Origin: Podarcis vaucheri
Taxonomy: Eukaryota
Strand: one strand, 5' to 3'
NCBI GenBank assembly: GCA_965113315.1
Contig: OZ220365.1
DNA: 64,000 nucleotides
Every line of letters begins with the position of its first letter. The stretch's first letter is position 1. The notes under the pieces were generated by a model. It had not been told where the DNA came from and did no database searches. It saw nothing but the letters and a program-made list of their open reading frames with translations. Made by a program: the position numbers and the translations under genes. Of this stretch, positions 15,386 through 53,020 are shown piece by piece.

Positions 15386-16619
15386 CTTGGGAGTAAGTCA
15401 CACAGTCTGGTTTCATTCTGAGTGTAGGATTGAACTGTAAATCTACTTTTACATAGTTTATGTTTCTGACGAACGTTGACTGAAAAATAGGAACAAATTG
15501 AGGTGGGGGCATGTATTGTTTTTCAAGTTTTCTGGCTCCAATACTGTTGCACCAATGTTTTCTACGTTGGTGTTTCATATACAAATATTTGCCGTAGCAT
15601 TGCCTTCGAACAGCTCTACTAAGCTGTTGTTTAAAGTTTGTGTCAGCCCCACGTTTTAGCCTAATTAACCAGATGGGCAATGCAGCCGCCTGCGTTTTTT
15701 ACTGCCTCTACATGGAATTCAGGGAGGTGATCGCAGGATAGCTGTGATGAAGGTGGACAAGAGTTTTGCCTAAGGAGCTGGGATTTTCTCTCTGGAGAGG
15801 TTGGAGGCACTTTATTAAAATTTTCAAATAAGATAAAAGGCAGGTTGTGCCATTTCAATCTGAGCTGAGTTTGCTTAACAAGTAATTGTATAAACTGTGC
15901 TGTGCTTTTTAAAAAGATTGTTTAATAATAAATTTTGCTGTGGGGAAAGGTTACTAGCAGGCCTCACAAACGGGGTTCTTGTTGATTCTGCTCTTCCTGA
16001 GAAGCCTAGGTGATCCAACCAATGCAAACTCCTTGGGCGGCGGTGGGGGGAGATGGAGAAGAGAGAGAGAGAGAGCGAGCGCGCTTCTGGGATCCAGCTC
16101 AGGGTCTCGTACTGGGAGGGAGGCAAAACAGAAAGCGGCACAAGGAGAACCCCCGATATGTTACAAAATCCACATCGTGAATAATCCGGTTAAATGATAA
16201 CAAGTGCCAGTGTAAATACGAGGGACCTGCGCCTTGTGCCTTTGGATGTATCCATAATGGGAATCGCTTTCTGAGGGCGTTCATATGCTAAATGAATTAA
16301 ACCTCTTATCTTCGCCGACTACTGGATGAAATTCGGGCCAGAATCTCTCCCTCCTGCTCTCCCCTCCACCCTCCCTCGGTTCCCGTCTCTCCTCCCCCTT
16401 TCCAAGCCTCTCTTTCTCCCACAATCCTTCTCTCCCGCCTCCCTCCCCAAGCTTTTTTCCTTGCCATCCTGCAAAGCTAACAAATTCCACCGTCTGCCTT
16501 TAAAAGCCGCTGCTAATTTGGGCCGAGAGGGAGAGACCTATTTCCTTGTTTGTCATAATGCAGGTTAATTCGCTTTGGTGCTTTGCGAGAGTCAGGTTAG
16601 CATTTATTCATTTGCGGCC

Positions 16620-18250
16620 AGCGATCTGCTCCGCGGCCGACCTTCCTCTTTGGTCGCATCCGGAGATCTGGCCGCGCGGCTCCTCCGGCGGCCCCCAAAG
16701 CGCGCTCGGCCCGCAGCCTCCCGGTCAGGATGTGCGCCTGGAAGCCCGACGCCCGCCCTGGCTCCTGGGGACAGGGCTCGTGACTTGGCTCCTTGGCGGG
16801 GCTGGGCGGGGAGCTCCTCTCCCGGCCCCGGGGCGCTGCCTGGGTCTCTTGGCCTCTCTCGCCGGACTTCGCGCAGGACAAGTCGAGGGGCGGGGGGGAT
16901 TTCTGGCGGGGCTGGTGAAAGTGCGCGGGCAGGAAGGCGGAGCCCCGCAGGGACCCCGCTGGAAGCTCAGCTGACCCCAGGAGCCAGGCCTGTCCCCAGC
17001 CAAGCTGAAAGGGGCCCCCGGATAATGGGGTTTGCTTGGTGAGGCTTTCCAGGGCTGAAGGGAAAGGGCGGGGCTGGCACAAACGGGGGTTCTTTACTGA
17101 ACCCCTAACTCTCGTCGGAAGAGGCTCTGCTTATTAACTGCTGGCGTTTGGCGCTTGCTTCTCTTTTAAATTCACAGTTGGGAAAACTTTTTCTAGATAC
17201 CCTGAGAGGGAGGGAGATGAGAGGAAAGCGAGCTACGAAGTTTGCACAGCCCAACAAGTTCCTGAAAAGCAATCCTTTGGAGAAGGAAGTGCCACAGACT
17301 CCCTGGAACTTTGCTTCCAAGTAACTTTCGGGCTCAGCTTTGGTGTGGCCCCTCCAGCATTGGGGGGCTTATTTCGGCCCGGCTCTGGGCCCTCCTGCCG
17401 GGACTCGCAGCCACTTCCTTCTCTTTCAAGCGGCTGGACTGCCGAAGGGAAGGGAGGGCGCCTCCCCAGATTTTCCTTCGAAGAGCGGGGAGAGCTCTCC
17501 ACCATCCGGAGTCTATCCTAAAACTCTAGTCATTGGTTATCTAGGAAACCCTTCGCTCACGAGAAAACCTCTTGCTTAGGAGAGAGGCTTCTGCCTCTTT
17601 CCCGGCGCTATAACTAGTAGGCGTTTGCATCAAAACAAAACGAACCCCAAAGCAGCAGAGAACACCTAGCGCGTAAAAAGGGAGCTGAACTTTGGAAATG
17701 CAGAGTTGCGCGCAAGAGGCAGGCTGGCTGCTGAGCGAGGCGAGAGAGAGAGAGAGATGGATGGATGTCCCTTTCCCCCTCGCCTGGGGACCCTTTGCCT
17801 CCAAAATGCACGATCACCCCACCCACCACAGGACGGCGGCGACCATCATCTCCAGCTCTCACGCCTCTGTTGCCCCCCCCCCCTCGTCTTCCCTTCCCTT
17901 ACCTGCGCCTGCCAAGTTAGGGCCACCTGAGTGGGAGCCCCTGCTCGACGCCAGCTGGTTCCCAAAAGGTGCCGGCCAGGCCGGGGCGGGGGAGCAGTTC
18001 TTTCCAAGCGGTGTCTCGAGAAAGAGGCAAAGAGCCTTAGGCCGTCTTTCTGCGCGCCCCGAACCTGCGGCCCAAGATCGCCTCGGCTTCCTCCACTGCC
18101 GGCTTAGTCTCTCCGCACCTGAAGGTTTGCAGGAGAGAGAGAGGGAAAACAGCGAGACCCGCATCTTCCGCGTCTCCCCCGCCACATACTAAACTTTTTT
18201 GTGTCCGCGTCTCCCTGGCTTCTCTCTGGCTCTGAGAGTTGCTCGTGCCC
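16620..18250. promoter_or_regulatory. CpG island between the EHBP1 3' end and OTX1
   Basis: Very high GC and CpG density; boundaries estimated by eye. Confidence 0.75.
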
Positions 18251-20903
18251 CCCTTTCCTGCCCTTAATCCATGGGTTTTATGGGCTGAGCATTAAGGAAA
18301 TTCGCCTGCAATTTGGGATTAGACAAATACTCTTATTACAGGGGGAGGGAGGGGGAAACACAGAAAGAGAGAGAGAGAGAGAAGTAAGGCGTAGGGGTTT
18401 AGTGCTACTTGATACTCTGAGCTTTTCACTAGACTTGATCGCATCATCCGAAGCTTGAGACGGAGGCAGGCGGCTGCCAGACTCCAAATCTGACTCTGAG
18501 GAGGCCAAAGGAGCACGTTCCTGAGGAATCTGCCTGCCCGCCTCAGCATCAGGATCCCAACACAACACAACAGCACACACACACACCCGCACAATCTGCT
18601 TTATTACAGAGGGAAAGGGGAGATTAAAGCTAATTCTGAATTTTGAGGAGGGGTGAGCAGAAGGACCCCTGTTCTGACTCCATAATCCACTGATGGGGCT
18701 ATTTCTGGAGACTGACACTAAAGAAGAAAAGAACCCCCACAAAGCTCGGAGGTCCCCCGTGGATAATGGTCTCCCATACTTTGGCCAAGGTACTGGTCCC
18801 AGCGAGAACTCCCCGCTTCCACTCCTCTCCCCCCCCTTCTTTTGCCTGCCCCATCTTTCTACTTTTTGTGAATGGGCTGCGGCGGCTTTTGTTCTGAGGA
18901 GAAGTGCCCGTGTCGCTGACTTTTGTGGGCTATAGAAGGATCTTGTAAACCTCATTTTTCTCCCTCTCTCCCTCTCTTTCGCCTCTCCGCCAGTCCACTT
19001 TGATTAGATGTCCCCCTCAATGGGGGAAAAATGTAATTTCGTCAGGACTGTGGCGGTCACTCCCTTTGAACATTAGCTCGCTTTCAGCTCCAGCTTCAAT
19101 TAGAAGGAGTTGATTTTGAGAGATCAACAAAAGGACCGCACCAAAGCCTTATTAAAGGTCCTAAGAAGATCTCCCGGATCCTTTGAGAAGCAGTTAAAGA
19201 AACAGTGTGCTTCCCTCATATTCTGTTACCGTGTTTCATTGGGACTCCAAAGGGAAAGTGTCTCACGGAAAAAGGGGAAAGCGGAGCGGGGGCAGCGGGT
19301 TAGAGGACCCTCACTTTGAAGCGGCGGCCACCAATTCCTTCCTGACCTCGCTTTCATTCCGTTTGTTAGCAACCAGTTGATTCGGAGGGTTTCTTTCCCC
19401 TTTGAAAAAACCATGATGATGATGATGATGATAATTCCTTTTCACTTTAGTCTTTGTATGTTCAGAAGTTTTCTTTCTATTAAAACTTCTTTACAAAGGG
19501 GGGAAGAAATAATTCTTTGTAAAGGATTCGTGTCTATTAATATTTATGATAATGAACTAGATACCCTCGACGTGGCGCGCACTCTGTGCGCTCAGAAGGT
19601 GTGTGTTGTGGATGGATGCGCGTGCGGCGTATGCAGGCTGGCGACTAGCAACTGCAGAACTAGCGTTGTAGAATATGATATAGAGGAGGTATAGATACAA
19701 CCAATCTGGGCTACCATCTGCGCATTTTAACAACTTTTATGCTTATGCCCGCATCCTGAGGAAACTTACTTGGCAGGAGGACCCACTGACGCCCTTTGAA
19801 CTTTTGTGTAACACTCTTAACAAAGGGTCGTTGGGAGCAAATTACTTTATTTCGCGGGCACTTATTGTTCCACAAATACACTTAGAATCAGAGCTCACTT
19901 CGGATTATGTTTTATTAAAGTTGTCCTCCTCGGCCTCAGACACTTCCTTGCCAAGTCCGAGAGACGCCTCCCGGGTCCCCGAGAGACGGACTTCGGAGGC
20001 TGCAGGGACTGATCGAGGCTGCTGCGCGCAGCTTGCCTGGCAACTAGCCGGCAACAGGTTTCCAGCAGCCGCGCCACGCGCAGATTGCAGAAGCCCAAGC
20101 AAACGGGATCCATACGGCACAAAAATGGGCGGCGGGGGGGGGGGACTGGACTAGAATTGCCACTACTTCGACTTTTGCCCTGCGGAATTATAGAACCGAA
20201 GTAATCCGTGGAGATATATGGATCGAGGCGTCTACTGGTTCTCGGCGTTTGTCTTCTCCCTTGAAAAACACCCCCTTGGACAGCCTTTGCTCTCCCCAGA
20301 AACCTGCCTTCCCCGAATTGAGAGCGGGAAACAGGCGTCCATCGGGCCTGGCCGGGGCCAAACTCGGGACACTTCCCGGGCACCGAAATGAATGGGACCT
20401 GCGCGCCGTTGAAGCGCCCGAGATCCGGCGCAGCAAACTTTCTTTTGCGGAAGAGCAACGCGGCTCGGACTGAAAGGAGACGGCGAAGACAGCCCGGCGG
20501 GGAGAAGGAGGGCGCCCCGTCCCGGGAGAGGGCATCCTCGGGCCGCCCGGGAAGTGCGGGGCGAGGGGCGGCGGCCCGGCCGGTCTCCCTTCGGGCGCGG
20601 AAAGTCCCCTGCTGGGCACGAGGGCGCAGCGCGGCGCGCCCCTCCCCTCCCCCCCCGGCCCGCTTTGGAGGGGGGTCCCGGCCGGGCCTGGGGGGCGTCC
20701 ATCCCGAGGGAGCCCCGGCCCGGGAGTCGCGCGGGGCTGTTGCGGGCGGGCGCGGGCGGGCGGGCCGGGCTGGCGCGGGGGCGGGGGCGGGGCGTGCGAG
20801 GGAGCGCTCCTGGTCCCGCGCTGCCATTGCCCGGGCGGCTGTCACTCAGCGGCGGCGAGGCCGGGGATTGGCGCGGGCCGGGCTACGCACTGGCCTGGCG
20901 CTC

Positions 20904-20997
20904 ACCTACCCGGGCCGGGCGGAGGAAAGGGGATCAATCTTCGTCGGGCTGCATTTCCAATCACCTGAAGAGCCGGGCGAGACGCGACCTCGGCCAG
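20904..20997 (+). other. OTX1: OTX1 non-coding first exon (5' UTR)
   Basis: ACCTACCCGGG..GATCAATCTTCGTCGGGCTGCATTTCCAATCACCT resembles the start of the human OTX1 mRNA as recalled; strong donor CAG|GTAAGG at 20998. TSS approximate. Confidence 0.75.
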
Positions 20998-21008
20998 GTA
21001 AGGAGCGC

Positions 21009-21063
21009 GCCGCCGCCGCCGCCTCGGGCTCTCCCTCCTCCTCCTCCTCCTCCTCCTCCTCCT
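21009..21063. repeat. (GCC)5 and (CCT)10 trinucleotide tracts at the start of OTX1 intron 1
   Basis: Direct reading of the sequence. Confidence 0.85.
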
Positions 21064-23722
21064 CTCGCCTCGCTCCCCGGGCCGGGCAAGAAGTTGCCAA
21101 GGAGCCTTCTCGGCGGGGCGGAGGAGGAGGAGGAAACTCCAGCTTCCCCGCGAAACTTGCCTCGGCCTCCTGGAAGCGGGGTACGGGGCTCCGCCGACGC
21201 TGCCCTCTGGCTCCCTCCGCGCGCGCCCTCCCGCCTCAGCCGAGGGCGCTGGGGCTGCTGCTTTCCTCCGCTGCGGGGACCGGGCTCGCCCGGCTGGCGC
21301 TCCCGGGGCCCCGAGGGCCCTGGCCGGCTTCCCCTCGACACCTTCTGGCGCTGCGCCGCCTCCTCTCTCGCTCGCTCGCTCCGCGCCCGGCCGGGGACCG
21401 GCAGCCCCGCGGAACCTGCTCGGCGAGGGGCGGCTGAGCTCCCAAGGGGGATCCCCGTCCGTCTCTCCCGGTTGCGAGGCGACTTTCTCTGTTCTGCCGC
21501 AATCTTGACTTGCTGCGTCTTGGCTGCCGCGGGGCCTGTCCGGGAGGACCTTTGGCCGCCCCCCCCCCCCGGTTTCTCCGGGGTCTCTGGCCAGCTCCCT
21601 CCCGGGATTCCTGGGCCTCCTTCGAGGTGCCTCGTCCGAAGATCTCTCGCTCCAACTCTCCTTTCCTGAAATTCAAAGCGCCCAAGGAAGGCGCTGAGGG
21701 AGCCGCTGTTTAGGAGATGTTTTGAAAGGCTTATTCAAGTGCGATCCCGGAAAAACGCATTGGGGGGGGGGTTGCAACTGAAATAAATAAGCAAAAGTGT
21801 TGATGTTTCAGAGAGTTGCAGTCTTGACTACTTTAAAGCAAGTAGAGCTGGAAGAATGGAACTATCCTCCAAGTCAAAACAAAACAAAAAATTTCCGTGT
21901 TGCTGAAGTTTTTGCAAAGTCTAAGGCCCAATCCCAATGTTATTTCCTCTAAAGGAAACCACACGGGTTTCAAAAGGCCCTTAATCTTGTCAGCACACTT
22001 AGGACCGCAGCCTGCTAAAGTAAAGCAGATGGACTTTCTTTTCACTTTTTGAATCGCGTGAAGAGGCAGAAATCCCTTCCTTCTCAAATCAAACCAAGGA
22101 GAACTTTAAAGCAAATCAAACTTAAGGGAAACAGCAACAGGTTAATCAGTTTTAAGAGTGTGGAATGCCTTAAATTAATTTGGCATATATCGGCCTTTAC
22201 AGCCTAAGAAAAAATTATTAGCTTAAATTTAAATCCCACTTCATAGTTCTTGCTCTTGTTTCTTATTTATTTATTTTGGTTTGGTTTGGTTTTGTAATCT
22301 TTCTGCTATAAATATAGGTTTTGGAAGCAGGATGGCCTGCAGTCCAATTAAGGTTTCTGGCCAATAATTAATTGAGGTTAATGCCACCACCATCTGCTGC
22401 TGCGGGATGTGGGATTTTATTTTATTGTATCTGCTTGGTTTGTCTAACTTATTGTTTGTGCGTCTCTCCGGCCGAATCCATCGGCTAATGAACCTGCTGG
22501 ATCTGGACATGGGAAAATTTACCTAAATATCTGTTTCTCTCAGTTGAGAAAAAAATAAACAAATGCCTACAAAATCCCCCCAGAAACCCTCTTATAAATC
22601 CTTGGAATTATATAACTTCGAGGAACCACAGCAAAACTTTTAAGGAGCTGTAGAATTAAAAACAGCTACAGCACCTTGAATGTTTTGCCTATACAGGGAT
22701 TCTGCGGGTATATAAGCCACCAGCCTTACTCATGTAGTTGGAAGACAGTTTGCGTTGGCCTAAATTTTACTTTATTACTTTAGTAAGAGGGCCTAGGATC
22801 CTGCCTTCAGTCTTCGCTACTCTCCGCCACCCGAAAAACGCGAGAATTAGGCAACTTTGTCGTGCCGTCTTCCTTTGCCTTCCTCCGCGGCTCTTCCGTC
22901 AGTCGGGCGGGGGGCTTTGGAACGTGAATTTCAAAGCAGCTCCTGGAATCTGTTTGTTTTTAGGCCATTAGCCATTTCTAATTAAAGCCTCTCTTTCTCC
23001 CCACTTTCAAATTAATTATACTTACCCCCTTTTTTGGTATCTCGTTTTGATTTTTAATCCAATTATCTTTTTAAATAATTGCTTTATCTCCCTCATCGCG
23101 GAGTACTGTACCCCCTGGAAGCCCCTCGGCGATTGTATGGCAATATGGCTGTAGTTATTAAAAAAAAAAAGTTCGGGGGGGGGGAGTAGACCTCCTTCCC
23201 CACTCCCACTCCACCGCCCAGTTACACCTCTTCACTCTCTGTCACTTTCTGAGTCCACTTCCCCCTTTTCTTGGCGGGTGGGGGGAATTTCCGCCATCTT
23301 GTGTGCGACGGAGAGACTTGACTTTTGTCCTTTAAAAAAGCCCTATTTATACGGAGTGTGTATGTGCATGTATACCTTTTTTAAGACCTAATCTTGCCTA
23401 ACTCCGAGTACAAGTTTTCTTACTCCTGGACCAGGTGTTGGGAAGAAACCCCTCGCCCCTTTTTTTGTTTTAAATTGACAGTCTTACGTTGCTTTATTTC
23501 CCTCCTTGCGCTTTTGAGAGGGGTTTTTTTTTCTTAGTTAGGATCTGCCATAGCTGTGTATAAAATTATATTCCAGCTTGGCTTTATCTGAAAGTCAAAT
23601 AAATGAGAAGGAATCAGAGGGAGGGAAGTAAAATAGGCGCGCTCTGTGTGGAAACTTAGGAAAAAGCTGATGTTTTGCCTTGTTCTCTGTCTTGTGCGTG
23701 TGTTTTTTTTCTGTTCCTGCAG

Positions 23723-24013: not shown

Positions 24014-25714
24014 GTGAGCAGCACCAACCTCTTTTGCTTCTACTACCCGCTGATTATTGGCTAGGCAGATCGAGCCCCTCCAAGCAGCCTCGTAGTTAAT
24101 TTATGCGGCTGAAATAAAATAGTTCCTCAATTTATTGTAGAGGTTCTACAAGGCGAAAGGGATCCGAGAGCCTATGGATAAAGCTCTTGATAGATCATAT
24201 TATTATTTTTCCAGGTCAGCAAAACCATTTTCCATAATTGAATTATCCACTCTTATTATCACCCCCCATACCTGTGGTATCCTAAACTACCCCTGTATTG
24301 GAAAGTGAACACTGCTGATTTTCCTGGCGTTTAATTCAATGTTAAAATGCTTATTTCTCATGGCACCCTAGCACCCCAGGCCAACCTTTAAACAGGTTGG
24401 TATTTAGTAATTTGGTATTTAGTCCCTAATTATAATCAATGGGGAGCACGCTAGCAAAATGTTTACTGTCCAAAGTGTGAGTTGCCAAGTTTCAGATTTT
24501 GACTTGCTTTTTAAGACCCGATTTATTTTTGTTGTTGTTGGAGTGTATGCCTTGACAATATTACAAATAAAACAAATGTGGGTTTAAACTACTTGCACTT
24601 TGAGGGATACATCTAAAGCCAAATACAAACACGTTTAAATGTTACTTCTCCTAAGGTTATTCGTGCTTGAGAACTAACTGGGGGTGGGGGTGAAATCCTT
24701 TGATTGCGAACTTGGGCTGCCCATCCGAAGTTAGGAGCCAATCTTTTCTCTTTTCCCGGGTCCATAACTCCACAGTACTCCCCGCCCCCACGGATGAGTT
24801 TGCTGAGAAATGAAGAAATGGGGTGTTAATGGGCTTTCCCCGTGTCTTTTCAAATGCTGTTATAGCCTGATCCACAACCCAGTTAAGCCGGAAGTCGTGG
24901 CATATAATGCGAGAAAGTGCTGTCTATCCCCAGCTCAAGAAGTTCTCTGTCCTTCAGAAATGCTTGAGTTCTCCTGACCCTGAATGCGCAGGCAGCCGGG
25001 CTTTCACTGTGAGGTAACCCTCTGCTGACTTCAGTGAAACTCGCTCCCATTGCAGGGCTGCAGCTTTAAACCGTCATTCCAAAAAGCGTATTTGTTCTGC
25101 AAAGTAGCACCAATTTAATTCTGCTGCAGTTACTGCGGAGTAAATTATACCTGGGATTGCAGCTTTACTTGGAGGATTCAAGACCTAAGGTCTTCCCTGG
25201 AACTTACGTCCAACTAAAGTTCTTTTTAAAAATTATTTAAATGACTGGGCTGTAAATAATCTATTTAAGTACAGATACTTCCATTTTAACTGGGTTGTCG
25301 CCAAGAGACCCAGAACTTCAAGTGAGCTGCTCTTTTACGTCGGAGGCCGCTCAGGAAACTCAGTCTGCAACCCGAATAGAATTTCCGTCGGCGCTTACCT
25401 CCCCTCCTCCTCCTCCCTGTGGTCCGCAGAGTTTCTCACCCTCCCCTACGCCAACAGACGCTTTGTGTTTCTATTTATGCGCCTTTAAAAATATCAGGAG
25501 CTGCCCTTGTGGTTTGGGCTTCTTTGTGCCTCCCCCGCCCCCACCTCCTGATTCGCTTGCTGGACGGGAGAGCGGCGAGCGCGCGTCTCTCCTCCACCTC
25601 CCCATCCAGAACCAGGGGCCGGGGGGGGGGCGGAGGGAGGGGCGGCGGGGCGGATCTTGACCATGCCGACACGGGTCCTAAACACCCCCTGTCTTTCTGT
25701 CCCGGGACCCGCAG

Positions 25715-25866
25715 CCACCCCTCGGAAGCAGCGGAGGGAGCGCACCACCTTCACCCGCTCGCAACTGGACGTCTTGGAGGCGCTTTTCGCCAAGACCCGC
25801 TACCCGGACATCTTCATGAGAGAGGAAGTGGCGCTGAAAATCAACCTGCCGGAGTCCAGAGTCCAG
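25715..25866 (+). CDS. OTX1: OTX1 coding exon 2 (homeodomain N-terminal arm to start of helix 3)
   Basis: AG at 25713-25714; 152 bp; (A)[50 protein letters not shown]; GT at 25867 at the paired-class Q/V intron position. Confidence 0.98.
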
Positions 25867-30738: not shown

Positions 30739-31563
30739 TGCGCTGATGGCTGGCTCATTGCCTGCTTCTATTGGATGTTACTAGTAGAAGGTGCATGAGG
30801 TACTGGACTGCCAGCTTAATTTATAAATGGCTATAAGGAGGATTGGTTGGACAGGGCTGTGTTGGTGGAACTGGTGCAGACTCCCACTCCCTTTCCTACT
30901 TTTTGGATAGTATGACATGATGGATGTGGGTGGACTGGCAGCCCCTCTCTGCAGGAGCCTGCTGGGAGGAGGATGGAAGTTGGCTAGGGGGGAAACTTGA
31001 TCAAACCATGATGGGTTGCGTCATTCACCTGAGCGGAAGATGGGTGTCATGCCAGGCGGGTGCTGAGTCTGGGGGTGTTTTGGCTAGGGTGTGGTTTGTG
31101 GTGGCTACGTGGGGTTCCAGAGTCGCCCAGAACTGGTTAGCTGGGTTCTGTTCTGGGTCGCACCAGCGACTTACCTTCCCTTTCTCGCGGGCCCCACATG
31201 GACGCAACAGTGTGCGGAGACTGGCGAGAGAGAAGGCGCTGAGCCAGAGCCGGGTGGCTCCTGATTGCCACTCGTAGGAAGCCGGCAATGGATGTGTAGA
31301 TCCATTGTGTAGTGATGCGTAGTGATGGAGGATGATAGGCTAGCCTGGACAGCTGCTCAACGGCCTCTTCCCCCCTGCCCCATTCCGCGTAGATTGAGAT
31401 TGTTTGGCACTTTTCTGTCTCGTTGCGATCACACAGCGTGTGCCAAAGGGGGCGAGGGGAAGAGAGCGGGGGGGCAGAGCGGGGGTGGGGTCCCTTCTTC
31501 GTGGAAGAGCCTGTTCCGCCCCCCGCCCCCATTTTCTTTTCTTTTCTTTTCTTTTCCTTGCAG

Positions 31564-32400
31564 GTCTGGTTCAAAAACCGCCGCGCCAAGTGCCGCCAGC
31601 AGCAGCAGAGCGGCAGCGGCGCCAAGAGCCGGCCGGCCAAGAAGAAGGCGTCTCCGGCGCGGGAGAGCTCGGGCTCGGAGAGCAGCGGCCAGTTCACGCC
31701 GCCCGCCGTCTCCAGCTCCGCCTCGTCCTCCTCCTCCAGCTCCAACTCCTCGGGCCCGGCCAGCGGGGCGGCGGCCTTGGGCAACCCGGCGGGCAGCGGG
31801 GCCTCCGGCTCGGCCTCGTCCTCCTCCTCGGCGTCCCTCAGCAGCGCGCCCTCGGCCGTGGCCGCCTCGTCCATCTGGAGCCCCGCGTCCATCTCGCCGG
31901 GCGCCGTGCCCGAGCCCCTGGCGCCCGGCGGCGCCTCCTGCATGCAGCGCTCGGTCTCGGGCGCGCCCTCCGCCTCCTACCCGATGTCCTACGGGCAGGG
32001 CGGCGGCTACGCGCAGGGCTACCCCGCGCCGCCCCCGCCGCCCCCGCCGCCCTCCTCCTCCTACTTCGGCGGGGTGGACTGCGGCTCCTACCTGCCCATG
32101 CACGCGCACCCGCACGCCCACCAGCTCAGCCCCATGGCGCCCTCCTCCATGGCCGGCGCGGCGCACCCGCACGCCCACCACCCGCTGGGCCAGGGCTCCA
32201 GCCACCACCACCATCACCACCACCACCACCACCACCAGCCGGGCTACGGGGGCACCGGACTGGCCTTCAACTCCTCCGACTGCCTGGACTACAAGGAGCC
32301 GGCCCCAGCCGCCGCCGCCTCGTCCTGGAAGCTGAACTTCAACTCCCCGGACTGCCTGGACTACAAGGACCAGGCCTCCTGGCGCTTCCAGGTGCTGTGA
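31564..32400 (+). CDS. OTX1: OTX1 coding exon 3 (K50 recognition helix, SIWSPA motif, His tract, duplicated Otx tail)
   Basis: Long polypyrimidine tract plus CAG at 31561-31563; [23 protein letters not shown]11..[26 protein letters not shown] at 32398-32400. Spliced protein 361 aa. Confidence 0.98.
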
Positions 32401-37279: not shown

Positions 37280-38720
37280 TCACTAGGGGCCTGCTTCCGA
37301 GTCACCTTGCGCAGTAGTCAGCGCGATATTAAACAGGCAGAATGGCAAAACGGAGGATCTGCGGAGGGAGATTTCTTGAGCGCTCTTCTCTCCACTAGGA
37401 GAGAGCGGGGGTTGCCAACGAGAACCCAGAGCGGGATAAGTCACCCGACTTGCTGGAGAGGCAATGGCGCCTCGACGCCAGGAGTATTGAGCAGCGACTC
37501 CCCGACAGGCGGACGCGCGTGAACAACCTGTTTTTGTTTTAGCAACAGGGAGCAACGTGCGCGCGCGCCCGCGTGTGAAAGAAGAAGGCAGCGCACGAGC
37601 AAGCACCTTGCCAGCAGCAAGAAGAGTTTCACTCCTGCCGCAGCGCTTTGCTTGGCGTCACCTCTTTTGCACCCAGTCAGTTCCAAGAAGCCTCTTCCTC
37701 CGCCTTTTGCGCAACTCTTCCTCCTCTAGTGTGTCCTCATTTGCCTTTTGCCTGCAGTTAGGAGACGAGAAAGACTCTCGCGTTTACTGAGCTTGGGGAC
37801 GGGTGGAGCGGGTCCCTTGAGATGGCAGCGCGCACCTTGCTTCGAGAGTGGGGCTGGGCGGGGAACCCGGAGTCCAGTTGGACCTGGGGTAGCAGGATTT
37901 GAACCCCCGCTCGGCCATGAAGCTCACTGCGGGACCCTGGGCCGGACACCATCTCTGAGCCTAATCTCCCTCGCGGGGTTGTTGTGAGGATGAAACTGGG
38001 ATGATGGGAACCCTGCAGGCCACACGGAGATCCCTGGAATACAGGAGCGGCGCATAGCGCAAGCTGCCCCCCCCCGACCTTGGCAGCCCCCCCCGGCTCC
38101 CCTCTCCGGGGCGCAACTCCCCCCCCCGCCCCTCTCCGCCCCCTCGGCGGGATCTGTCTGCCGGCTGCGCGGGGGCGACTCGCCTTCCTCTTCGCGCAGC
38201 CCTTGTCCAGACTGGGCGGCTTCATTAACAGCTGGCAGCCCGCGGAAGACGCGCCCAGCCGCGGGGCCTCGCCGGAGCCCGCGCAGTTTCGCTCCTCCTC
38301 CCCGCCCGCCCGCCCAGGAGTTGCAGCCCCAGCCGCGGCGAGGAGGAGCAGGAGCAGCCCGGGCGGGAGCGAGGCCGGCCCAGCGCAACCCGACAAGGCC
38401 CCGCGGAGGAGGCCGAGGGGGCGCACCCGCCCGCGCTCTGGCCGAGAGTCCGGCGGCGAGGGAGCCCCGAGGAGGCGCTGTCCCGCCCGAGAGAGGCGAA
38501 CCGCGGCGCCCTCGCCCTGCCTGCCTCCCCCCCCCCCGGTTATTAGAAATCCCCCCACACAAAGTGGAAAGTTTACCGAAGGGATGAAGAGGAGTGTGCG
38601 GTGTTTTCCTCGCAATATTTACCTTTTGATTTGCTAGTGGGAGTTATATTTGGTTAAAGCCAACCGATTTTCTCGGCGGTGGTTTTAATCTCCCGGGGGC
38701 GGGTGGGACATTGCCCAAGA
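37280..38720. promoter_or_regulatory. Orphan CpG island about 5 kb downstream of the OTX1 stop
   Basis: Very high GC/CpG content with no recognisable coding exon. Confidence 0.7.
37870..38040 (+). mobile_element. Squam3-like tRNA-derived SINE fragment
   Basis: ..CTCGGCCATGAAGCTCACTG..CTCTGAGCCTAATCTCCCTCGCGGGGTTGTTGTGAGGATGAAA; similar to copies at 41615 and 50693. Confidence 0.65.
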
Positions 38721-45025: not shown

Positions 45026-47628
45026 TTAATCTAGAATAGTTTAACTGAAGTATCATTTAGTGGGACAGTTTCATGCTGTAAGTCATGGGCTGCAATCCCA
45101 TTTGGACCTTCATTCAAATTCACTCCAGGACCAAAAGGCTTCTGTCTTGAATGTGAAATATGCAAACCATTCCCTGCTGAGGAGTCAGATAACGCACTGG
45201 CATATAAGCACACTGTGGATTCATTTGTTGACTTCAGTAGGCTCAGAATTACTTGCAATAGTTAATTTCCTCTTCCCCTTGCCCTGCCTCCCAAACAAGA
45301 CTGTAGGAAGCCAGAATGCAGTCCTGTCCTTCTTTCACCTCCATGTGGAGATGACATGGGAGAACACCAGAAGGTGAATTGAAGTTGTGCGCATAGAGTC
45401 AAAAATAAATTCTTTCTCTAATTCCTCAGAGTGATGGGGAAGGAAATTAAGAGGCTATTAGAGTTAATGTAGGTACACGCTAAAGTATGTATACTAGCTG
45501 TCTCTGCAGTCGCCTGAGTATATGTCTTAATAATGGGCTGCAGGGAAAATAAGTTTGTTTCTTTCCTTTTGAAATTCACAGTAAAATAGGAATTGTAACA
45601 GTGCCCAGGAGCACTGTGGTAATTTAAGGGTCTGTCAACATTTTCATAATAAACTGACGGGGTTTTTTTGGTGGAGGGTTTCCGTATTTCTGACTTGACT
45701 GTTTAAATTTTGCTTCAGGCAGATGGCATACAACTGTAATGTAGAGGAAAAGATATTTAAAAATATAAACACAGCAGGGTTTCAGGTAGTCTTGCAGCCC
45801 AGTTTTAGCCAGTTTAGTTCTACCAAAACTTTGTTTAAGAGCAAAAGGATCTTTTATTGCATCATTACAACTACAAGTTCAGTGATCCCACTTCCACATA
45901 CACAAAGCACTTTGAGAACAATCTGTTTTAAAATAACTGTGATGCTAGAAGCTTGATTTGGGATCCTTCTTGCAACTTCTCTAGTAGCTAAAGCAATAAA
46001 GCATTGCCTTTCCTTTTGAGGAGTGAGGCAGGGGTGTTCTGTTTTATACACTTCTAACTTCCAGTTTGGGGAGCGTTAACATTTTCAGCTTGCAGCGTAG
46101 CTGATGGCACATGCGCTTGACCCAAATATAGCTTTTGTAGAAACACTGGTTCTAGCATCTAGACTGGATAAATGGATGAGATTAAAAACCCTATTGAAAT
46201 TCCAGTGACTCTGCAGTGGTGAAACAGCTCCTAAGTTCAGCAGAATACTGTCCCCTTAGGAATTGTAGTATACTATTAAGATGGCCTACAAACAATCAGT
46301 TCCACAAACTAGTTCAGCAGAGTACTTATTATTGTTACTGTTCTTATTTTATTATTATCACCAGCCCTTCACAAGCAGGGTTATAGCAATTCAGAATTTA
46401 GAATTAAAAACAGTTAAAGCAAATTACAGTCACACAAATAAGGTGTTGGCAGGCTTGGAGGTTTTAAAAAGTGGTAAGGGTTGAATGTGTACTAACCTTA
46501 TAGAAAGCAGAAACAGCAGGTCTGGCAAAGAACAACCTTCTGTGTACTGATAGTAGGACAGCATTCTCCGTGTTGCACCTGAGAGTGGCAGGCTAGCTGG
46601 GGGCCTCTTGTTGTCCTACACAAAGTAGCCCCTAATTTCAAGAGGTCTACTCTGAGTAGGACTAGCACTGAATACCACCCGTGGTTTTGAAATTTCCTAG
46701 AGTTCAGCTAGCATTTTGTCTGGCAGCTCTACTCTATGCACTTAAGGGGATTTTGCTCCCAGCTACCCATTCAGTCACTTTTGACTGCTGCAACATCAGA
46801 CGAGGACTTTCTCTTCACTTCTCCCATCAGAGATTGAGCTAGGCTGTTAACATTTTTTTTAAAAAATCATCTGTAGGTTTAATCTTTCCCTCCCCCCTTC
46901 TGTTCTTTTTGTGTTTGGTTTCTCTCTGTTGCTTCATACACCTCAGGGCAGCTCTCCTGCCTTTTCTCAGGCTTATTATGAGTTTGGGCGACGGGGGTGG
47001 GGGGAAATAGGCTGTATGCACGAATGCAAGTTCCTTCTAACCCCTGGATCCAGCAACTGTTAAAATATAAGCCAGGTGAGCTTCCTGTTTTGAAGTAATC
47101 GCCCGGATGCCTAACAGCAAATGGGTTGCGCCCCTCAGACAAAGCCTGAGTTTAGAGTTAAAAAGGGCAAGCTGGAGAGAGAGAGTCAGAGCAAGGTTTG
47201 AAAGCAAAGTTTGATTTCTGTTTGAATCTAAGACTGTGGCTGTGGGAGAAACTAGACCCTTTTGGGGTGTTAATGCTGTGAACCCCTCCATCGTAGACTC
47301 AGGCTATGTGTATATATGTGTAAATAAACCATATATCCTAAAGACACCAGTCTCCGCTGTCCCTCATTCCAAAAGAAAACACAAACTGTGGGTAAGCACT
47401 TGGAATCTATGGAATCTTGCCCCAGTCGGAGATTGGGGTGGTGTGCAACAGGCCTATAGCTCAGTTCTCTTTTCAGGTCCTCCATTATCTCCCAAGACAG
47501 ATGGATGCCCACAGTAAATTGCTGCCCACTGATGGGCGCAGCCTGTGCCAACTGCACTTGGGAAAAGGGCACATTGTCAATCATTGCAGTGTTACCAGCA
47601 ATTTATGAAAGAAGTGTGCCAACTTGTG

Positions 47629-50201
47629 CAGGGTTGCCATATTTTGGAGAGCAAAAAAGAGGACACATTTGCTGACTTCTACTTTTAACTACAGATCTCT
47701 ATGAAAACTCTCATTTGAAATATCCCTACTATATGTAGGCTATTCCCACATAAACTTACATAGGATTCCACTACTGATGGCCATTAAGACACAGAGGTTA
47801 GATGCCATCTGTCAGGGACATAAGAGCGATAGGTCCTTTGGATTAGTAGTACAGCAGCAGCCAGCCTTCCCTCCAGATTCTGATGACTGCCGGCCACTGC
47901 CTCTCAGGGTTCATTGATCAGCAAACTGTAGAGTTGGAAGGGGTCCTGAGGGTCTGATATGACTATCATTCTCTGAAATTTCCTCTCTGCCCCCCAGCGC
48001 CCTCTGAAGCTGACCACCACCCACCCACCCCACTTCGCCCCTCTACCTGCCAGGCAACTTTGAGGTGCTGGAAGCCGTGGTTGAAGAGCAGCTCCTGCAG
48101 CACCATCTGCACTGGCACATTATGGTCAAAGGGCAAGCACAGCAGCCAGTGGAGGGGCTTGGGGCTGCGTGGGTCATTGCCCACCTGCATCTTGGGGTTG
48201 GCCCCTCCATGCGCCCCATGGCTGTGTGCCACCAAGAAGTGGAAGTGGAGTAGTGGCTTGCTGGGCACCTTGGTGGCCTGGCAGGTCGAGCTCAGGTCCA
48301 GCTGGAAGGAGCCATTTCCAGCACCAGGGGAGTTGTCATGGAAGGGAAACTACCCGCGGCTTCTGGTTCCACTCTGCCTTAATGGAGGCAGCTCCCACGA
48401 CAGCAGGAGATTGTTGGTGAAGGAAATCCCAGGATGATTGAAGGTAATTATCATTGCAAATTCCCTCCAGGGACGGGGTGGGGTGGGGATGGACTTCATT
48501 CGCAGTTCGTCTCGGTACCTGGCTCTCGCTCAGGCATGGATTGTGGGAGGCAGGGAGGTGCTGAGTGCAAAAAAGTCTTACAAGGACAGGAAGAAACAAC
48601 ACGGACAAAATAAGCCTCCAAAAACCCTCCAATGCCACCAATAAGAAGCAGAGGTTTTCCAGTTAATTAGAGTTTAATTGGACAAAAGTACAGGCACATG
48701 CTAGAAGAGATGAGATCACAAACTGCGGAACAATAACAACTGCAAAGACTTTAAGGTTTGAATTTGAGATACGAGTAAGACTTCATTCGGTGCAAAAGAT
48801 GGTGTGTGGGGAGGGGAGCTTATGGTTTCTTTATTTAAAGTTTTCTTTTCTACATTTAGGATTTGGCAACCCTCCTCTTAATGTTAGTTCAAAGTAGTTG
48901 TATTTGTACAAGCAAGGACGGAAGAAATTGGATTATCGATATGGAATGTAATATTAAACGGAACTGTGTGTGTAAAAAAACAGGAGAAAGGGAGGGAAGC
49001 TCTATTTTTGCAAAAGGTTTATGATGGAAACTTAGAGCTGACTCTTCCCCATCCTTTATTATTTACGGAGTGAACTGAATAATGCTAAGAGGACTTGGAA
49101 TTTAATTTAATTGGAAGTATAATTGCTCATTTATCTTCAGTTGGACAGAAGGATGAAAGGAGTCTGTGAACTTGCCAAGGAACTGATAAGGTTCACTACT
49201 GAGTCATCTGCAGTTCAACAGACCACTCTTCTTCCCAGGCTGAGAGGGAAAAGGGTAAAAACAGGTTATTTATTGGGACACAGTGATTTTTGCATCTGTT
49301 GTTAAAGTTGTAAAACAATGAAGCATGAAACTGAGCAATTTAGAAATTTCAGGAACAACAGTGGGATATCAGCTCTGCCCAAGGCATGATGGAGTACAGC
49401 AAGAACCGGGCGAAAGAAAGACATAACATCTTACAAGGACAGGAAGAAACATCACTGACAAAATAATTGCCACACACAGGAAGAACAAGGATATAGTTTG
49501 AGTTCCTCACTTGTAGTTTTATAAATTATTTAATGTGTCAACATGAATAGAAGTTATTGATACTGCAGTTGTTGTATAGGGGATTATTATTATGACCAGA
49601 ATGTAATGGAAATTAATAAGATTTTGGAACACAGAAATAAAGCAAACAATCAAGCCATCAATTCTAGCATGTGGGAGGCCATCTCATCTAAATTATATAA
49701 TTCGGTATTTGAACAATTGGTATTAATAATTGTATTATAAATTGGTATTCCTATAATGAGGATACTATTAGATTGTAATTGAAAACTAATAAAAATTATT
49801 ATCAAAAAAAGAGAAGGGAAACAACCTGCCGACCACCTCCATCACCTGGCACACAAATGGCACCACCTCTCACCCGGCCTGGCCTTGGCTGCTTCCGTTC
49901 CCTCCGCCGACTGGAAAGAAGAGCCGCGTTTCGAGGTTCCACGCTTCAGAAGGGCCCTGATAACAAAAAGCAGCAATTCTCACTCTCACACAAACATAAA
50001 CGCCTCATGCATTTGGAGTTTATAGTTGGATCAAGTCAAAGGTCTATAATCCTGCTCTCTCATCGACCCTGTGATACTAATGGTACCAAACAACACCCCC
50101 CTCCCAGACATTTAGCCAAAATTTAAAAATCCAGCTGGACAGAACTTTAAACTGTGAAAAAGAGGATGTGTCCAGGGGGAAATGAACATATGGCAACCCT
50201 A
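47629..50201. mobile_element. 2.57-kb non-autonomous hAT element with internal cargo (candidate Pack-TIR)
   Basis: TIRs CAGGGTTGCCATATTTT and (reverse complement) TAGGGTTGCCATATGTT, 15/17 identical; perfect 8-bp TSD AACTTGTG at 47621-47628 and 50202-50209; AAAAAGAGGA subterminal motifs at both ends; no transposase ORF. Confidence 0.85.
48047..48428 (-). pseudogene. Exon-like coding fragment of an unidentified gene inside the hAT element
   Basis: 127 codons with one in-frame TAG (48350-48352); strongly C/G-ending codons (..CTG CAG GAG CTG CTC TTC AAC CAC GGC TTC CAG CAC CTC..); donor-like CAG|GTAGAG at 48046. Confidence 0.55.
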
Positions 50202-50692
50202 AACTTGTGCCTTCTCAAATCACTTCACAGCAAAGTACTGTTTCCTCAGATCTTCCGGCACTCAGATGCAGCTCTCACTCCTACAACTGGAGATGCCAGG
50301 GCAGAATACCTCACCCAGGTAAGCAAGGGAAGGAGAAATCTACCAAGCATAGCTGTGGCAAGGGTCTTTCATGCCCCCTTTGCCCCCTCCCCTCTCGCAG
50401 TATAGGATCACTGTGTCTTGGCTCTCCTGCTTTGGAGAAATAATCTTCAACAGCAAGTAGCAGGGTCTCCTGTGCAGAAGACATGTTCCCCATATCCAGT
50501 CAATCTAGCTGTCAGTAGACACTCCACTCCAGCCATTGTTGATGCTGGTCAAGTAGTCCTGACTACATTTGTCCTGTAGGGTCACATCTTGGTCACATAT
50601 CTTGGACACACTAAGCAGAACATCCCTAGCCAGTCAACAAGGTTTTCAGAGGAGGCTCTACTGGCTATACCACAATCAGTGGACTGCCTCCT

Positions 50693-50872
50693 TATTTTGT
50701 TTGTTTATTAATGATATATCCCACCTTTCCTCCAAGGTGGCCCACCCTGTGAAGTAGGCTAAGGTGAGAGATTGCAAGTGACTCATAATCACCCCATAAA
50801 CTTCATGGCTGAGTGTGGATTTGAACTCTGGTCTCCCAGGTCCAACACCCTCAACACTGAACCACACTGGCT
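50693..50872 (-). mobile_element. Squam3-like SINE
   Basis: Antisense tRNA-like head (GGATTTGAAC; ACCACACTGGCT) and (TTTG/TTTA)n tail. Confidence 0.7.
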
Positions 50873-53020
50873 TTTGTAAGATTCCTCTTATGGCATCTCA
50901 TGTAAGTCAACTGAACACAAGGCTTTTCTGCATGAGCTGGCAGGTGGTCAGAGGGGGTAGTTGAACTTTACTGACATTTGCTGCAAACTGAAGAGTGTTT
51001 TGTGTAGTTTGTTGTTGTTCTAGAAATCCAAACTGGCCTCACCACCACTTTTAACCTGCAATATTAGCAGTGGACTACATTGCAGGGCTGTCATACGTAA
51101 GCCAGTTCCTCTCAGCCACAGTCTGAATTATACAGATAACACACTGTATTGACACACAATATGCTATGAGTGTTATTTTGTCCAGGGGAAAGGATAGTTC
51201 CATGGTGTTAATGAATTGTTTCCAAAAGCAAAGGCAATATTCTATTAGGTAGTAAAAAGAATTTCTTCTGCAGCTGTGTTTGCTCCTTTGGCAAAATAGG
51301 ATTAGAATCTTACTCAGGAGTAGCAGACATGGCAGCATTCGTTTACTTCCTAACCTTACTGACTGTGTCCTCCCCTTCTATTGTCTTCTTACACCTCCCT
51401 CTTGATGTGCGTGTGCACACCCTCTCCCAATTATCTGGCTAGCTCTTGGGCTAGGGACCTGAGTTTTTCTTTTTGTTACTCTGTAAATGAACATGATGCA
51501 TTGAAGGTTTAGTTCATTTGCTGGATATATGAATAAATATTATGTATGTTTTAAATTGTAGTGGCTGTTTTTCCTCCCTTTATATTTTGTGGCAGCTAAT
51601 TGCTTACAATAAATTCAGACTGATTTTTAACTTTAGGTAGGAAATATATCCAGGTACCCAGAGGCTTACAAGCGTTTTAGCAATTCAGATGCAATGCAAT
51701 ACATTAACCAGCGGAGGGTTACAGTCTGACACTGGGCACTGAATGTTTGCCAGCCAGTTTCTTCAGATTATGAATTACAGAGCATTTCATGATACGACTA
51801 ACCCCTCCATCTTACACACACAGTTTTCTAGAAGCAGTAACATTGCTTCTACACAACGGTGTTTAGTCTTTTGAAAGTGGTGAAAGAGTGCACACATACA
51901 CAGAAGTAAATTTAATTGAAAGAAATGGACTGTTCCATGTAACATGTTTAGGACAGTGAGGGGAAACCTGTGGCCCTCCAGACAGTGCTGGACTCCCAAC
52001 TCCCATTATCCCTGACCCTTGGCCAGGCTGGCTGGCTTGAAGGAGCTCAACAGCGTTGGGGAAGGAGGGTCACCAGTTTGGGACATACACCCCAATCACA
52101 CCCTTGCCATTTTTAAAGGTTTTGTTTGCATTTGATCTAGTTACCAGAAAGGCAAACTCCATTTCCCTCTAGCCTTTAAAATAAAAATAAAAAACAGCTG
52201 TGATTTAGATGCCTTTCAGTTGTCTCAGACCCGACCTAGATAAAACAATTTCTGATTTAAAGTGCTGGTAATCATGTTTGTTTGTTTGTTTTTATTTAGC
52301 AAGATTTATATATCTAATAATTAAAAAAAACACCTTGAAGTGGTTTACATTTAGGACTGGGGTTTAATAATACTTGCATTTTACCCTCCTTTACCCTTCC
52401 TCTAGCTATGGATTCACTTGTTTCCTATGTTGGCTAATATATAATTCTGTGTAAACCAAACTCATGTATATTTTAAACAATATGTTGTTTGAATAGTGGG
52501 TATCACAGTGCCCATGTACTTTCCCCCTTCTTGGAGCCATCACCACCACCACCACCACCACAACAACAACTGTATTTTACAAATAAATAGATTTGTGCAC
52601 TTAGTTACCCCACCTGCTGTCTCAGAAACTCCCCAGTCATGTGAACTTTAAGTAAATGATTCCTTTTTTTGTTCCTCTTCAAGTGCCCACAACTAGTGAG
52701 ATTTTCAGTATTCAACCCTGAAATCTGAAGGATGAAACTTGGGGCTACTTGAAATTGTTTAGTAATTACCAGAGAACCATCACTTATACAGAGACTAACG
52801 TGGGAGTGCATTTTCTATGACCCAGTCTCTTCCATATCCAATAACATGTAATTATCAAGCCTAAGAAGTCCAGCGAAGGATTGTTGAACTAACCTGACTT
52901 CCTCCCCGCCCCTTTTTTTGAACACTGAACTTAACAATAATGGACCTGGAGTAATAATTAACAGGCATTCCTATTCAACTACCTATACTTGTCCTAGGAT
53001 CAGTGCTTTTTTTTGGGGGG

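What the first reader, a model, noticed from the sequence alone, without database searches (positions are those of the whole stretch)
47629..50201. Cargo-carrying hAT transposon (candidate Pack-TIR gene-capture element)
Seen: two hAT-type TIRs 2.57 kb apart (15/17 identical) flanked by a perfect 8-bp duplication AACTTGTG, so the interval is bounded as one insertion. There is no transposase inside. The interior is a mosaic of a CR1 scrap (about 47925-47970), a GC-rich coding-like segment, a LINE-like AT-rich segment and a small exon with intact splice signals. Known: 8-bp TSDs are the hAT signature, and host-fragment capture by TIR elements (Pack-MULE/Pack-TIR) is well described in plants but only sparsely in vertebrates. 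Inference: a lacertid non-autonomous hAT family that transduplicated part of a host gene, here landing about 15 kb from a developmental regulator.
Basis: partly seen in the sequence, partly recalled or inferred. Interest (0 to 1): 0.8.

Follow-up and report, generated by a model that had tools for sequence, protein, structure and literature searches.

The report
Old hAT mini-transposon holding ACTR5 exon 1
A roughly 150-base cut-and-paste mini-transposon, 15 kb downstream of the OTX1 gene of a wall lizard, holds a decayed copy of the start of the ACTR5 gene, which lies on another chromosome; this kind of gene-fragment capture is known in animals, and this copy is old, apparently single and inert.

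Summary
The 17-nt inverted ends match 15/17 and are flanked by a perfect 8-bp duplication, AACTTGTG. Read data show that 47629/30 is the true end of a family with several hundred copies.

The usual family members are about 150-bp MITEs with no cargo. This copy is opened at one internal point and holds about 2.4 kb. Roughly 0.95 kb of that is the 5' end of ACTR5 on the minus strand: upstream region, ATG, exon 1, splice donor and the start of intron 1. It is 68% identical in protein to Podarcis ARP5, groups with lacertids, and shows heavy CpG decay.

A 1.45-kb poly(A)-type retroposon later split exon 1.

The cargo reads as single copy at 85% likeness or more. The same insertion is present in at least three related species labels, and no empty site was seen. 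ACTR5 and OTX1 lie on different chromosomes in two Podarcis assemblies.

So host-gene capture is confirmed, but mobilisation with the cargo is not. This is a new member of the known animal Pack-TIR kind.

The scan has already noted similar hAT elements carrying first exons elsewhere in this genome (PKD2, CRPPA, SIX5). I did not check those notes.

The parts
47621..47628 (.). left copy of the 8-bp target-site duplication AACTTGTG
47629..47727 (+). left arm of the hAT MITE (TIR 47629-47645; subterminal GGACACAT motif)
   Evidence: depth about 418 in this bin against about 1 in single-copy flanks; reads start matching at 47630 with unrelated flanks; contigs of other copies run through to about 47727 and then continue at 50152/5
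47728..48046 (-). cargo: sequence after the exon-1 splice donor (GT at 48046-48045), taken to be the start of ACTR5 intron 1; contains a CR1-like scrap at 47930-47954
   Evidence: No ARP5 exon 2 follows anywhere in the window. Low read depth of about 11. CR1 motif. The intron origin itself is inferred, not shown
48047..48357 (-). cargo: main part of ACTR5 exon 1 (ARP5 residues about 8-128, with a 20-codon in-frame deletion and a stop codon just before FPF)
   Evidence: PDB ARP5 E 2.5e-15. 61/90 identical to Podarcis muralis ARP5. Groups with lacertids. CpG o/e 0.18 at 61% GC. Read depth 1.3
48341..48357 (.). left copy of the 17-bp target duplication of the retroposon (15/17 to the other copy)
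   Evidence: (D18)
   Evidence: Read depth rises from about 40 to about 336 towards the 3' end. Junctions. No Pfam domain
49813..49829 (.). right copy of the retroposon's target duplication
49813..49842 (-). cargo: first 10 codons of ACTR5 exon 1 (MEVVGRLFPF against lacertid MEEAGGVFPF), ATG at 49842-49840
   Evidence: Weak on its own (E 1.3), but in the right order, strand and frame, and joined to the rest of the exon through the target duplication
49843..50151 (-). cargo: 309 bp upstream of the ATG (5' UTR and promoter region of ACTR5, inferred); CpG o/e 0.59
   Evidence: Single-copy depth of 2. Composition. Only a weak collinear match to the 5' extension of the Varanus gene model
50152..50201 (+). 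right arm of the hAT MITE (TIR 50185-50201)
   Evidence: Joints 47690/1 to 50152/5
50202..50209 (.). right copy of the 8-bp target-site duplication AACTTGTG
   Evidence: Contigs of two other species labels bridge this junction

Best explanation
This is an old, fixed, inert Pack-hAT element.

Shown:
- An ordinary member of an abundant hAT MITE family of about 150 bp is opened at one internal point (after 47727, before 50152). Little or no MITE sequence is lost.
- The opening holds about 0.95 kb that includes the start of ACTR5 exon 1, its splice donor and what follows the donor.
- No other ACTR5 exon is in the window.
- The functional ACTR5 gene lies on a different chromosome from OTX1 in two Podarcis assemblies.

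Inferred route (my lean, about 45%): the MITE inserted here first and made the AACTTGTG duplication. Later a break inside it was repaired by copying filler DNA from the CpG-island 5' end of ACTR5. This is the transposition-independent gap filling described for most single-copy animal Pack-TIRs.

The nearly equal alternative (about 40%) is capture elsewhere followed by one cut-and-paste jump to this site.

Afterwards the copy lost its CpGs (many Arg to His and Glu to Lys changes), took a 60-bp deletion and a stop codon, and was split by a poly(A) retroposon. All of this happened before the related species labels that share it (about 1-2% different) diverged. It has no coding potential.
For: - TIRs and TSD.
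- Family terminus, short cargo-free relatives, single-copy depth of the cargo, and presence at the same site in organisms A, C and G.
- ARP5 homology: (E 2.5e-15), (68% to P. muralis ARP5).
- Only exon 1 is present, and it ends at CAG|GT.
- Lacertid placement with UFboot 98 / SH-aLRT 66, and the lacertid-only CRASEVPS motif (cargo CQATKVPS).
- CpG decay.
- Retroposon hallmarks.
- Tan et al. 2021 (PMC8277862): 208 of 370 animal Pack-TIRs are hAT; only four (1.4%) were multicopy; breakpoints are internal with small gaps; 94% of primate cases have the bare TE at the orthologous site; about 40% of single-copy cases are interchromosomal.
Against: - No outgroup with a bare MITE at this site was seen.
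- The parent gene is on another chromosome, whereas about 60% of gap-filled Pack-TIRs are in cis.
- Single-copy status holds only for copies at least 85% alike, and the cargo is old enough that sister copies could be missed.
- The canonical MITE structure rests on two listed joints; more were not shown.
- Notes of this scan report multicopy, mobile hAT elements with first-exon cargo in this genome. I did not check them. If true, they favour the jump route.
Confidence: 0.45

Rival explanations
1. Capture near ACTR5, then one jump. A MITE close to the ACTR5 5' end took up the promoter, exon 1 and intron start through repair or template switching. The loaded 1.1-kb element was then excised and pasted 15 kb downstream of OTX1 on another chromosome, and the AACTTGTG duplication was made at that moment. 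Cut-and-paste leaves one copy.
For: - The parent gene is on a different chromosome.
- Both TIRs and the subterminal motifs are intact, and the TSD is perfect.
- The family has several hundred copies, so it was active.
- In Tan et al. the multicopy, transposed Pack-TIRs are always distal from their parent.
- Unchecked notes of this scan describe multicopy hAT elements with the same build (5' flank, first exon, donor) in this genome.
Against: - The cargo shows single-copy depth at 85% likeness or more.
- No polymorphism or empty site appeared in the runs laid.
- In the published survey most single-copy Pack-TIRs were made in place.
Confidence: 0.4
2. One reading: a family of non-autonomous hAT elements that all carry this cargo and are spread through the genome, like a Pack-MULE family.
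For: The ends belong to a multicopy family.
Against: - Depth over the ACTR5 exon is 1.3, against about 418 over the left arm.
- Contigs of other copies join the two arms directly, with no cargo between them.
- No related small ORF exists in 5.8 billion proteins, and the best hit among cluster representatives is 59% identical.
Confidence: 0.05
3. The ACTR5 piece is a retrocopy of an (unspliced) transcript, inserted into the MITE by LINE machinery.
For: A poly(A)-type retroposon lies inside the cargo, so such machinery acted at this locus.
Against: - The ACTR5 piece has no poly(A) tract at its 3' end (around 47728) and no target duplication of its own.
- It carries 309 bp upstream of the ATG and stops in intron sequence.
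- The retroposon's own 17-bp duplication lies within exon 1, so it arrived after the exon.
Confidence: 0.04
4. Two separate MITEs, or a chance pair of ends, bracket a segmental copy of ACTR5 (a composite or an artefact).
For: Composite elements made of two MITEs are noted elsewhere in this genome (unchecked).
Against: - The window has only two TIR matches.
- The two arms are complementary parts of one MITE, broken at the same point.
- The 8-bp duplication is perfect.
- Contigs from three species labels agree with the assembly across both junctions.
Confidence: 0.03

Closest known systems
Animal Pack-TIRs, mostly Pack-hAT (Tan et al. 2021, Nat Commun 12:4280, PMC8277862), e.g. Pack-hAT-N8_XT of Xenopus tropicalis
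   Same: hAT ends with a TSD around a piece of host DNA. No transposase. Breakpoints lie inside the TE with almost no TE sequence lost. Single copy, like nearly all (all but four) of the published cases.
   Different: - That survey lists 0 Pack-TIRs for its only lizard (anoCar2).
- Here the cargo is a complete gene 5' end (upstream region, ATG, exon 1, donor).
- The parent is on another chromosome.
- The element is old and was later hit by a retroposon.
Pack-MULEs of rice and maize
   Same: TIR elements carrying GC-rich gene fragments, with a known bias towards gene 5' ends (from my own knowledge of the Pack-MULE literature).
   Different: Different superfamily (Mutator, 9-bp TSD, long TIRs). 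Pack-MULEs are often multicopy and transcribed, whereas this element is single copy and decayed.
Filler DNA copied into P-element excision gaps in Drosophila (gap repair with template switching)
   Same: This is the proposed mechanism: a break in or at a TIR element is repaired by copying ectopic sequence between the retained ends.
   Different: That is an experimental system in which the break comes from excision and internal sequence is lost. Here the MITE appears to be opened at one point without loss.
Composite (macro)transposition by two Ac/Ds or MITE copies
   Same: Host DNA is bounded by transposon ends and flanked by one TSD.
   Different: That route needs two elements, and each side would keep a whole element or its outer end from a different copy. 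Here the two arms are the two halves of a single MITE, and no further TIR is present.
Helitron gene capture in vespertilionid bats (Thomas et al. 2014, PMC4224331)
   Same: A vertebrate DNA transposon carrying promoters and first exons of host genes.
   Different: That is a rolling-circle element with no TIRs or TSD, capture by read-through, and amplification to many copies.

Membership tests
hAT superfamily, non-autonomous (MITE) | 8-bp target-site duplication | tested here: met
   AACTTGTG lies directly outside both ends, 8/8 identical
hAT superfamily, non-autonomous (MITE) | Short terminal inverted repeats beginning YAG | tested here: met
   CAGGGTTGCCATATTTT and TAGGGTTGCCATATGTT, 15/17 identical
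hAT superfamily, non-autonomous (MITE) | Many copies with unrelated flanks that end exactly at the TIR | tested here: met
   About 600 reads and about 150 contigs per run start matching at 47630, with flank consensus agreement of 0.34. Depth suggests some hundreds of copies
hAT superfamily, non-autonomous (MITE) | An autonomous partner with the same ends that encodes a hAT transposase | not testable with these tools
   No lizard genome collection was open to DNA search, and there is no transposase in the element
hAT superfamily, non-autonomous (MITE) | Target preference nTnnnnAn | tested here: inconclusive
   AACTTGTG does not fit on either strand, but this is only a statistical preference and cannot be judged from one site
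Pack-TIR (Tan et al. 2021) | TIR-element ends with a TSD around non-TE sequence | tested here: met
Pack-TIR (Tan et al. 2021) | The interior derives from a host gene that still exists elsewhere (a parental copy) | tested here: met
   ARP5 exon 1 homology. The window holds no other ARP5 exon. Intact ACTR5 is annotated in five lacertids, on a chromosome other than that of OTX1. The cargo groups with lacertids
Pack-TIR (Tan et al. 2021) | DNA-level alignment to the parent that fixes the breakpoints and any microhomology | not testable with these tools
Mobile, multicopy Pack element (Pack-MULE-like; the transposition-dependent class) | Several copies with the same cargo and different TSDs | tested here: not met
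   Read depth is 1.3 over the exon and 2 over the upstream part at 85% likeness or more. Copies diverged by more than 15% would be missed
Processed retrocopy of ACTR5 | Spliced, with a poly(A) tail and its own TSD | tested here: not met
   The piece ends in intron sequence after CAG|GT, has no exon 2 and no A-tract, and carries 309 bp upstream of the ATG
Poly(A)-type (L1-like) retroposon insertion (48358-49812 only) | 7-20-bp TSD, poly(A) signal and A-run at the 3' end, and 5'-truncated copies | tested here: met
   17-bp duplication, 15/17 identical. AATAAA lies 15 nt before the A-run. Depth rises about 8-fold towards the 3' end
Poly(A)-type (L1-like) retroposon insertion (48358-49812 only) | Remnant of a reverse transcriptase or ORF2 | tested here: inconclusive
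   No Pfam hit in 9 plus-strand pieces. The 1.45 kb may be 3' UTR, or a non-autonomous element

The most novel reading that the evidence does not exclude
This element is an old member of a long-lived lacertid 'Pack-hAT' system in which one abundant hAT MITE family repeatedly takes up the same kind of fragment: CpG-island 5' flank, first coding exon and splice donor. The examples are ACTR5 here and, in unchecked notes of this scan, PKD2, CRPPA and SIX5 elsewhere in the genome. The family can move these fragments between chromosomes. That would make it a vertebrate counterpart of plant Pack-MULEs with a built-in preference for gene starts, active both before and after the radiation of wall lizards.
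Probability: 0.3. Interest if true: 0.7.

Novelty: new member of a known kind. Interest (0 to 1): 0.4.

Why it matters
Gene-fragment capture by cut-and-paste transposons is well documented in plants and was surveyed in animals only once. That survey found none in its single lizard genome.

This locus is a clean, fully dissected lizard case:
- the parent gene is identified and lies on another chromosome;
- the cargo is a whole gene start;
- the order of events is clear: capture, then CpG decay, then retroposon hit, then speciation.

On its own it is an inert relic and changes little. Its value is as a dated, old data point for the wider pattern of first-exon cargo in hAT elements that the scan keeps meeting in this genome. 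It is also a caution that "TIRs + TSD + host DNA" does not show that the cargo ever moved.

Tried and rejected
- **Real ACTR5 locus:** rejected. Only exon 1 is present, the window gene is OTX1, and ACTR5 sits on another chromosome.
- **Two-MITE composite:** rejected. There are only two TIR matches, and the arms are halves of one MITE.
- **Retrocopy:** rejected. Intron and upstream sequence are present, and there is no A-tail.
- **The 'small exon' at 49123-49260:** rejected. It lies inside the multicopy retroposon, with no Pfam or protein match.
- **Weak tblastn matches to ARP5 exon 2** at 48485-48444 and 49399-49358 (E 0.4-4): rejected. They are out of order and lie inside the repeat.
- **Homology between the retroposon's 5' end and the ACTR5 upstream part** (repeat D9, 16/22): chance level.

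Searches that gave nothing:
- Rfam on 47000-51000.
- Pfam on 22 ORF pieces.
- Word search for small relatives of the cargo ORF.
- Self-BLAST of the element against the window.
- Full-text search for the TIR sequence.
- Paper searches for lacertid hAT capture.
- The scan's findings searched by sequence.

Other limits:
- The two pieces of exon 1 were searched separately by reference and never joined.
- The window's 359 N were left alone.
Full report
**Observation.** CAGGGTTGCCATATTTT lies at 47629-47645, and its inverted partner TAGGGTTGCCATATGTT lies at 50185-50201 on the minus strand (15/17 identical). These are the only two matches in the 64-kb window at up to 3 mismatches. AACTTGTG lies immediately outside both ends, at 47621-47628 and 50202-50209, and the window has only one other copy of that 8-mer. 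A subterminal GGACACAT motif is present in both arms. From sequence alone the chance expectation is about 4e-4 per window (my arithmetic). That is not negligible over a whole genome, so I looked for independent support in reads.

**Read evidence.** I laid window:46600-51600 on contigs of three runs (organisms A, C, G) and on raw whole-genome reads of organism E. About 1.9 Gb of organism E was read, roughly 1.3x coverage if the genome is about 1.5 Gb. The likeness threshold was 85%.

Depth in the raw reads, both directions summed:
- single-copy flanks: 0-1 (one flank bin reads 3.6);
- bin holding the left arm (47602-47768): 418;
- 47769-48102: about 11;
- main ACTR5 exon part (48103-48269): 1.3;
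- 48270 to 49605: rising unevenly from about 40 to 336;
- 49606-49772: about 260;
- 49940-50106: 2;
- bin holding the right arm: 17.

About 600 reads, and about 150 contigs per run, begin to match exactly at 47630. What precedes that point is unrelated, AT-rich sequence (consensus agreement 0.34). So 47629/30 is the true terminus of a family with some hundreds of copies.

Contigs of other copies join 47690/1 to 50152/5 with only 23-35 letters between. Those letters resemble 47692-47727 of this element. The usual family member is therefore a MITE of about 150 bp (left about 99 bp, right about 50 bp) with no cargo. This copy is opened at a single point, after 47727 and before 50152, and little or nothing of the MITE is lost. 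That structure rests on the two joints that were listed; 134 further rows were not shown.

**What the interior is.** The minus-strand ORF 48349-48044 matches actin-related protein 5 (the ARP5 subunit of INO80) in the PDB at E 2.5e-15, residues about 30-124. An exhaustive HMMER search of cluster representatives found only ARP5 N-termini. The closest full-length protein is Podarcis muralis ARP5, with 61/90 residues identical over residues 39-128.

The match ends exactly at the exon 1/2 boundary. There the DNA reads CAG|GTAGAG, a splice donor. No later ARP5 exon is present anywhere in the window. The copy therefore comes from genomic DNA, not from mRNA, and this is not the ACTR5 locus.

A second piece, at 49842-49813 on the minus strand, reads MEVVGRLFPF against lacertid MEEAGGVFPF. 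It is weak alone, but it has the right strand, order and frame.

**The retroposon.** The two exon pieces are separated by 48358-49812 and share a 17-bp direct repeat, GAAGGGAAAC[T/A]ACC[C/T]GC, at 48341-48357 and 49813-49829. The intervening 1.45 kb ends with AATAAA followed 15 nt later by an A-run that abuts the repeat. Its read depth climbs about 8-fold towards that end. These are the marks of a 5'-truncated, poly(A)-type (L1-like) retroposon that inserted into the already captured exon. No reverse-transcriptase remnant was found, so its family is left open.

The 'small exon with intact splice signals' (about 49123-49260) lies inside it, in sequence present 100-fold in the reads, and has no protein match. 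It is not an exon of a captured gene.

Without the retroposon and one repeat copy, the cargo is about 0.95 kb:
- 309 bp upstream of the ATG (49843-50151);
- exon 1 (49842-49813 plus 48357-48047);
- 319 bp after the donor (48046-47728), which holds a short CR1-like scrap sharing TAGAGTTGGAAG with the CR1 3' ends at 57.8 kb.

That the two non-coding parts come from ACTR5 is inferred from contiguity only.

**State and age of the copy.**
- 29 of 90 aligned residues differ from Podarcis ARP5.
- At least 21 of the 32 minimal nucleotide changes are G>A on the coding strand, and 4 are C>T. They give Arg>His or Gln nine times, Glu>Lys four times, plus Asp>Asn, Ser>Leu and Thr>Met.
- The exon is still 61% G+C but has CpG o/e of 0.18. 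It looks like a CpG island that was methylated and decayed.
- The invariant DNGS motif is now GNGS, 20 codons are deleted, and a stop codon precedes FPF.

In a tree of ARP5 exon-1 peptides, the cargo on a very long branch (1.07) sits with the four lacertids against 18 other tetrapods (UFboot 98 / SH-aLRT 66). It also keeps the lacertid-only CRASEVPS patch, as CQATKVPS. The source was therefore an ACTR5 gene of the lacertid lineage.

The retroposon's own target duplication already differs at 2 of 17 positions. Contigs of organisms C and G bridge the MITE/flank junctions with 1.2-2% differences: X17 record 15 covers 49783-50739, and X18 records 18 and 22 cover 47349-47677 and 49780-50316. A single read of organism E over the exon shares their variants. 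Capture, decay and the retroposon hit all predate these species labels. No empty site was seen.

**Where the parent is.** The window gene is OTX1, with the homeobox exon around 25.66-25.83 kb and the last exon ending at 32397.

In two assemblies the two genes sit on records of different length:
- P. muralis: OTX1 122,509,924 bp, ACTR5 102,226,558 bp;
- P. lilfordi: OTX1 119,730,235 bp, ACTR5 96,959,041 bp.

The parent is therefore on another chromosome.

**Mechanism.** Tan et al. 2021 (PMC8277862) found 370 Pack-TIRs in 100 animal genomes, 208 of them hAT and only four (1.4%) multicopy.

They argue that single-copy cases arise without transposition: a break inside a resident TE is filled by copying other DNA. 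Their evidence is that breakpoints are internal, that the TE gap is small (median 4.6% of TE size), and that 94% of primate cases have the bare TE at the orthologous site. About 60% of cases are in cis and 40% are interchromosomal. Multicopy cases were always distal from the parent.

This element fits that build: a single internal opening, no loss of MITE sequence, and single-copy cargo. I therefore lean, at about 45%, to filling in place.

The nearly equal rival, at about 40%, is capture near ACTR5 followed by one cut-and-paste jump. That would explain the interchromosomal position and would also leave one copy. My data cannot separate the two routes. In addition, the single-copy result holds only for copies at least 85% alike, which an element this old might not satisfy.

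**Comparison with other notes of the scan.** Notes from other windows of this genome describe hAT elements carrying CpG-island 5' flanks, first exons and donors of PKD2, CRPPA and SIX5. Some are said to be multicopy and polymorphic. I could not check whether they share these ends; the search by sequence returned nothing. They are leads only. If they hold, this locus is an older member of the same system, and the jump route gains weight. Note s1-850617, 'two minus-strand exon-like fragments of an unidentified gene', covers this same stretch. The two fragments are the two halves of ACTR5 exon 1.

**Limits.**
The intron and promoter origin of the non-coding cargo, the breakpoint microhomology and a DNA-based date are untested.

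**Verdict.** Capture of a host gene start by a hAT MITE is confirmed, but mobilisation with the cargo is not shown. This is a new lizard member of the known animal Pack-TIR kind, and it is old and inert.

Noticed in passing
window 25657-25830 and about 31560-32397 (+): Homeobox exon and last exon of OTX1 (His-rich tail), 98% identical to Podarcis lilfordi OTX1 and 97% to P. muralis OTX1. The window therefore comes from a wall-lizard-like genome, and the element lies 15.2 kb downstream of OTX1.
   Followed up: partly
window 48358-49812: Multicopy poly(A)-type retroposon with a 38-nt internal direct repeat (48576-48613 / 49429-49466, 95% identical). Contigs of other copies join 49402 back to 48578, so the family seems to contain a variable internal duplication of about 850 bp. 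No reverse-transcriptase remnant was found, and the family is not identified.
   Followed up: partly
window 47268-47434 and 50775-50941: Two very high-copy short repeats in the flanks (raw-read depth about 680 and about 446). Their match boundaries are sharp, at 47309/47349 and 50801/50843, and the loose-end consensus is shared across runs. They look SINE-like. The left flank up to the insertion site is itself moderately repeated (depth about 96), so the MITE landed in or next to an older repeat.
   Followed up: no
window 48047-48316 (-): Among the Arg (CGN) codons of the captured exon, nine became His or Gln (G>A on the coding strand) and only one became Cys (C>T). Symmetric CpG deamination should give about equal numbers (binomial p about 0.02). 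TpG and CpA counts on the DNA are balanced (33 against 31). This could be chance, or strand-biased deamination of a single-stranded repair intermediate.
   Followed up: partly
Read depth here is only about 10-fold.
   Followed up: partly
window 16500-21700 and 37700-38650: Long GC-rich stretches with overlapping open frames on both strands, 4-9 kb upstream of the OTX1 homeobox exon and about 5 kb downstream of the gene. They look like CpG islands or regulatory blocks.
   Followed up: no
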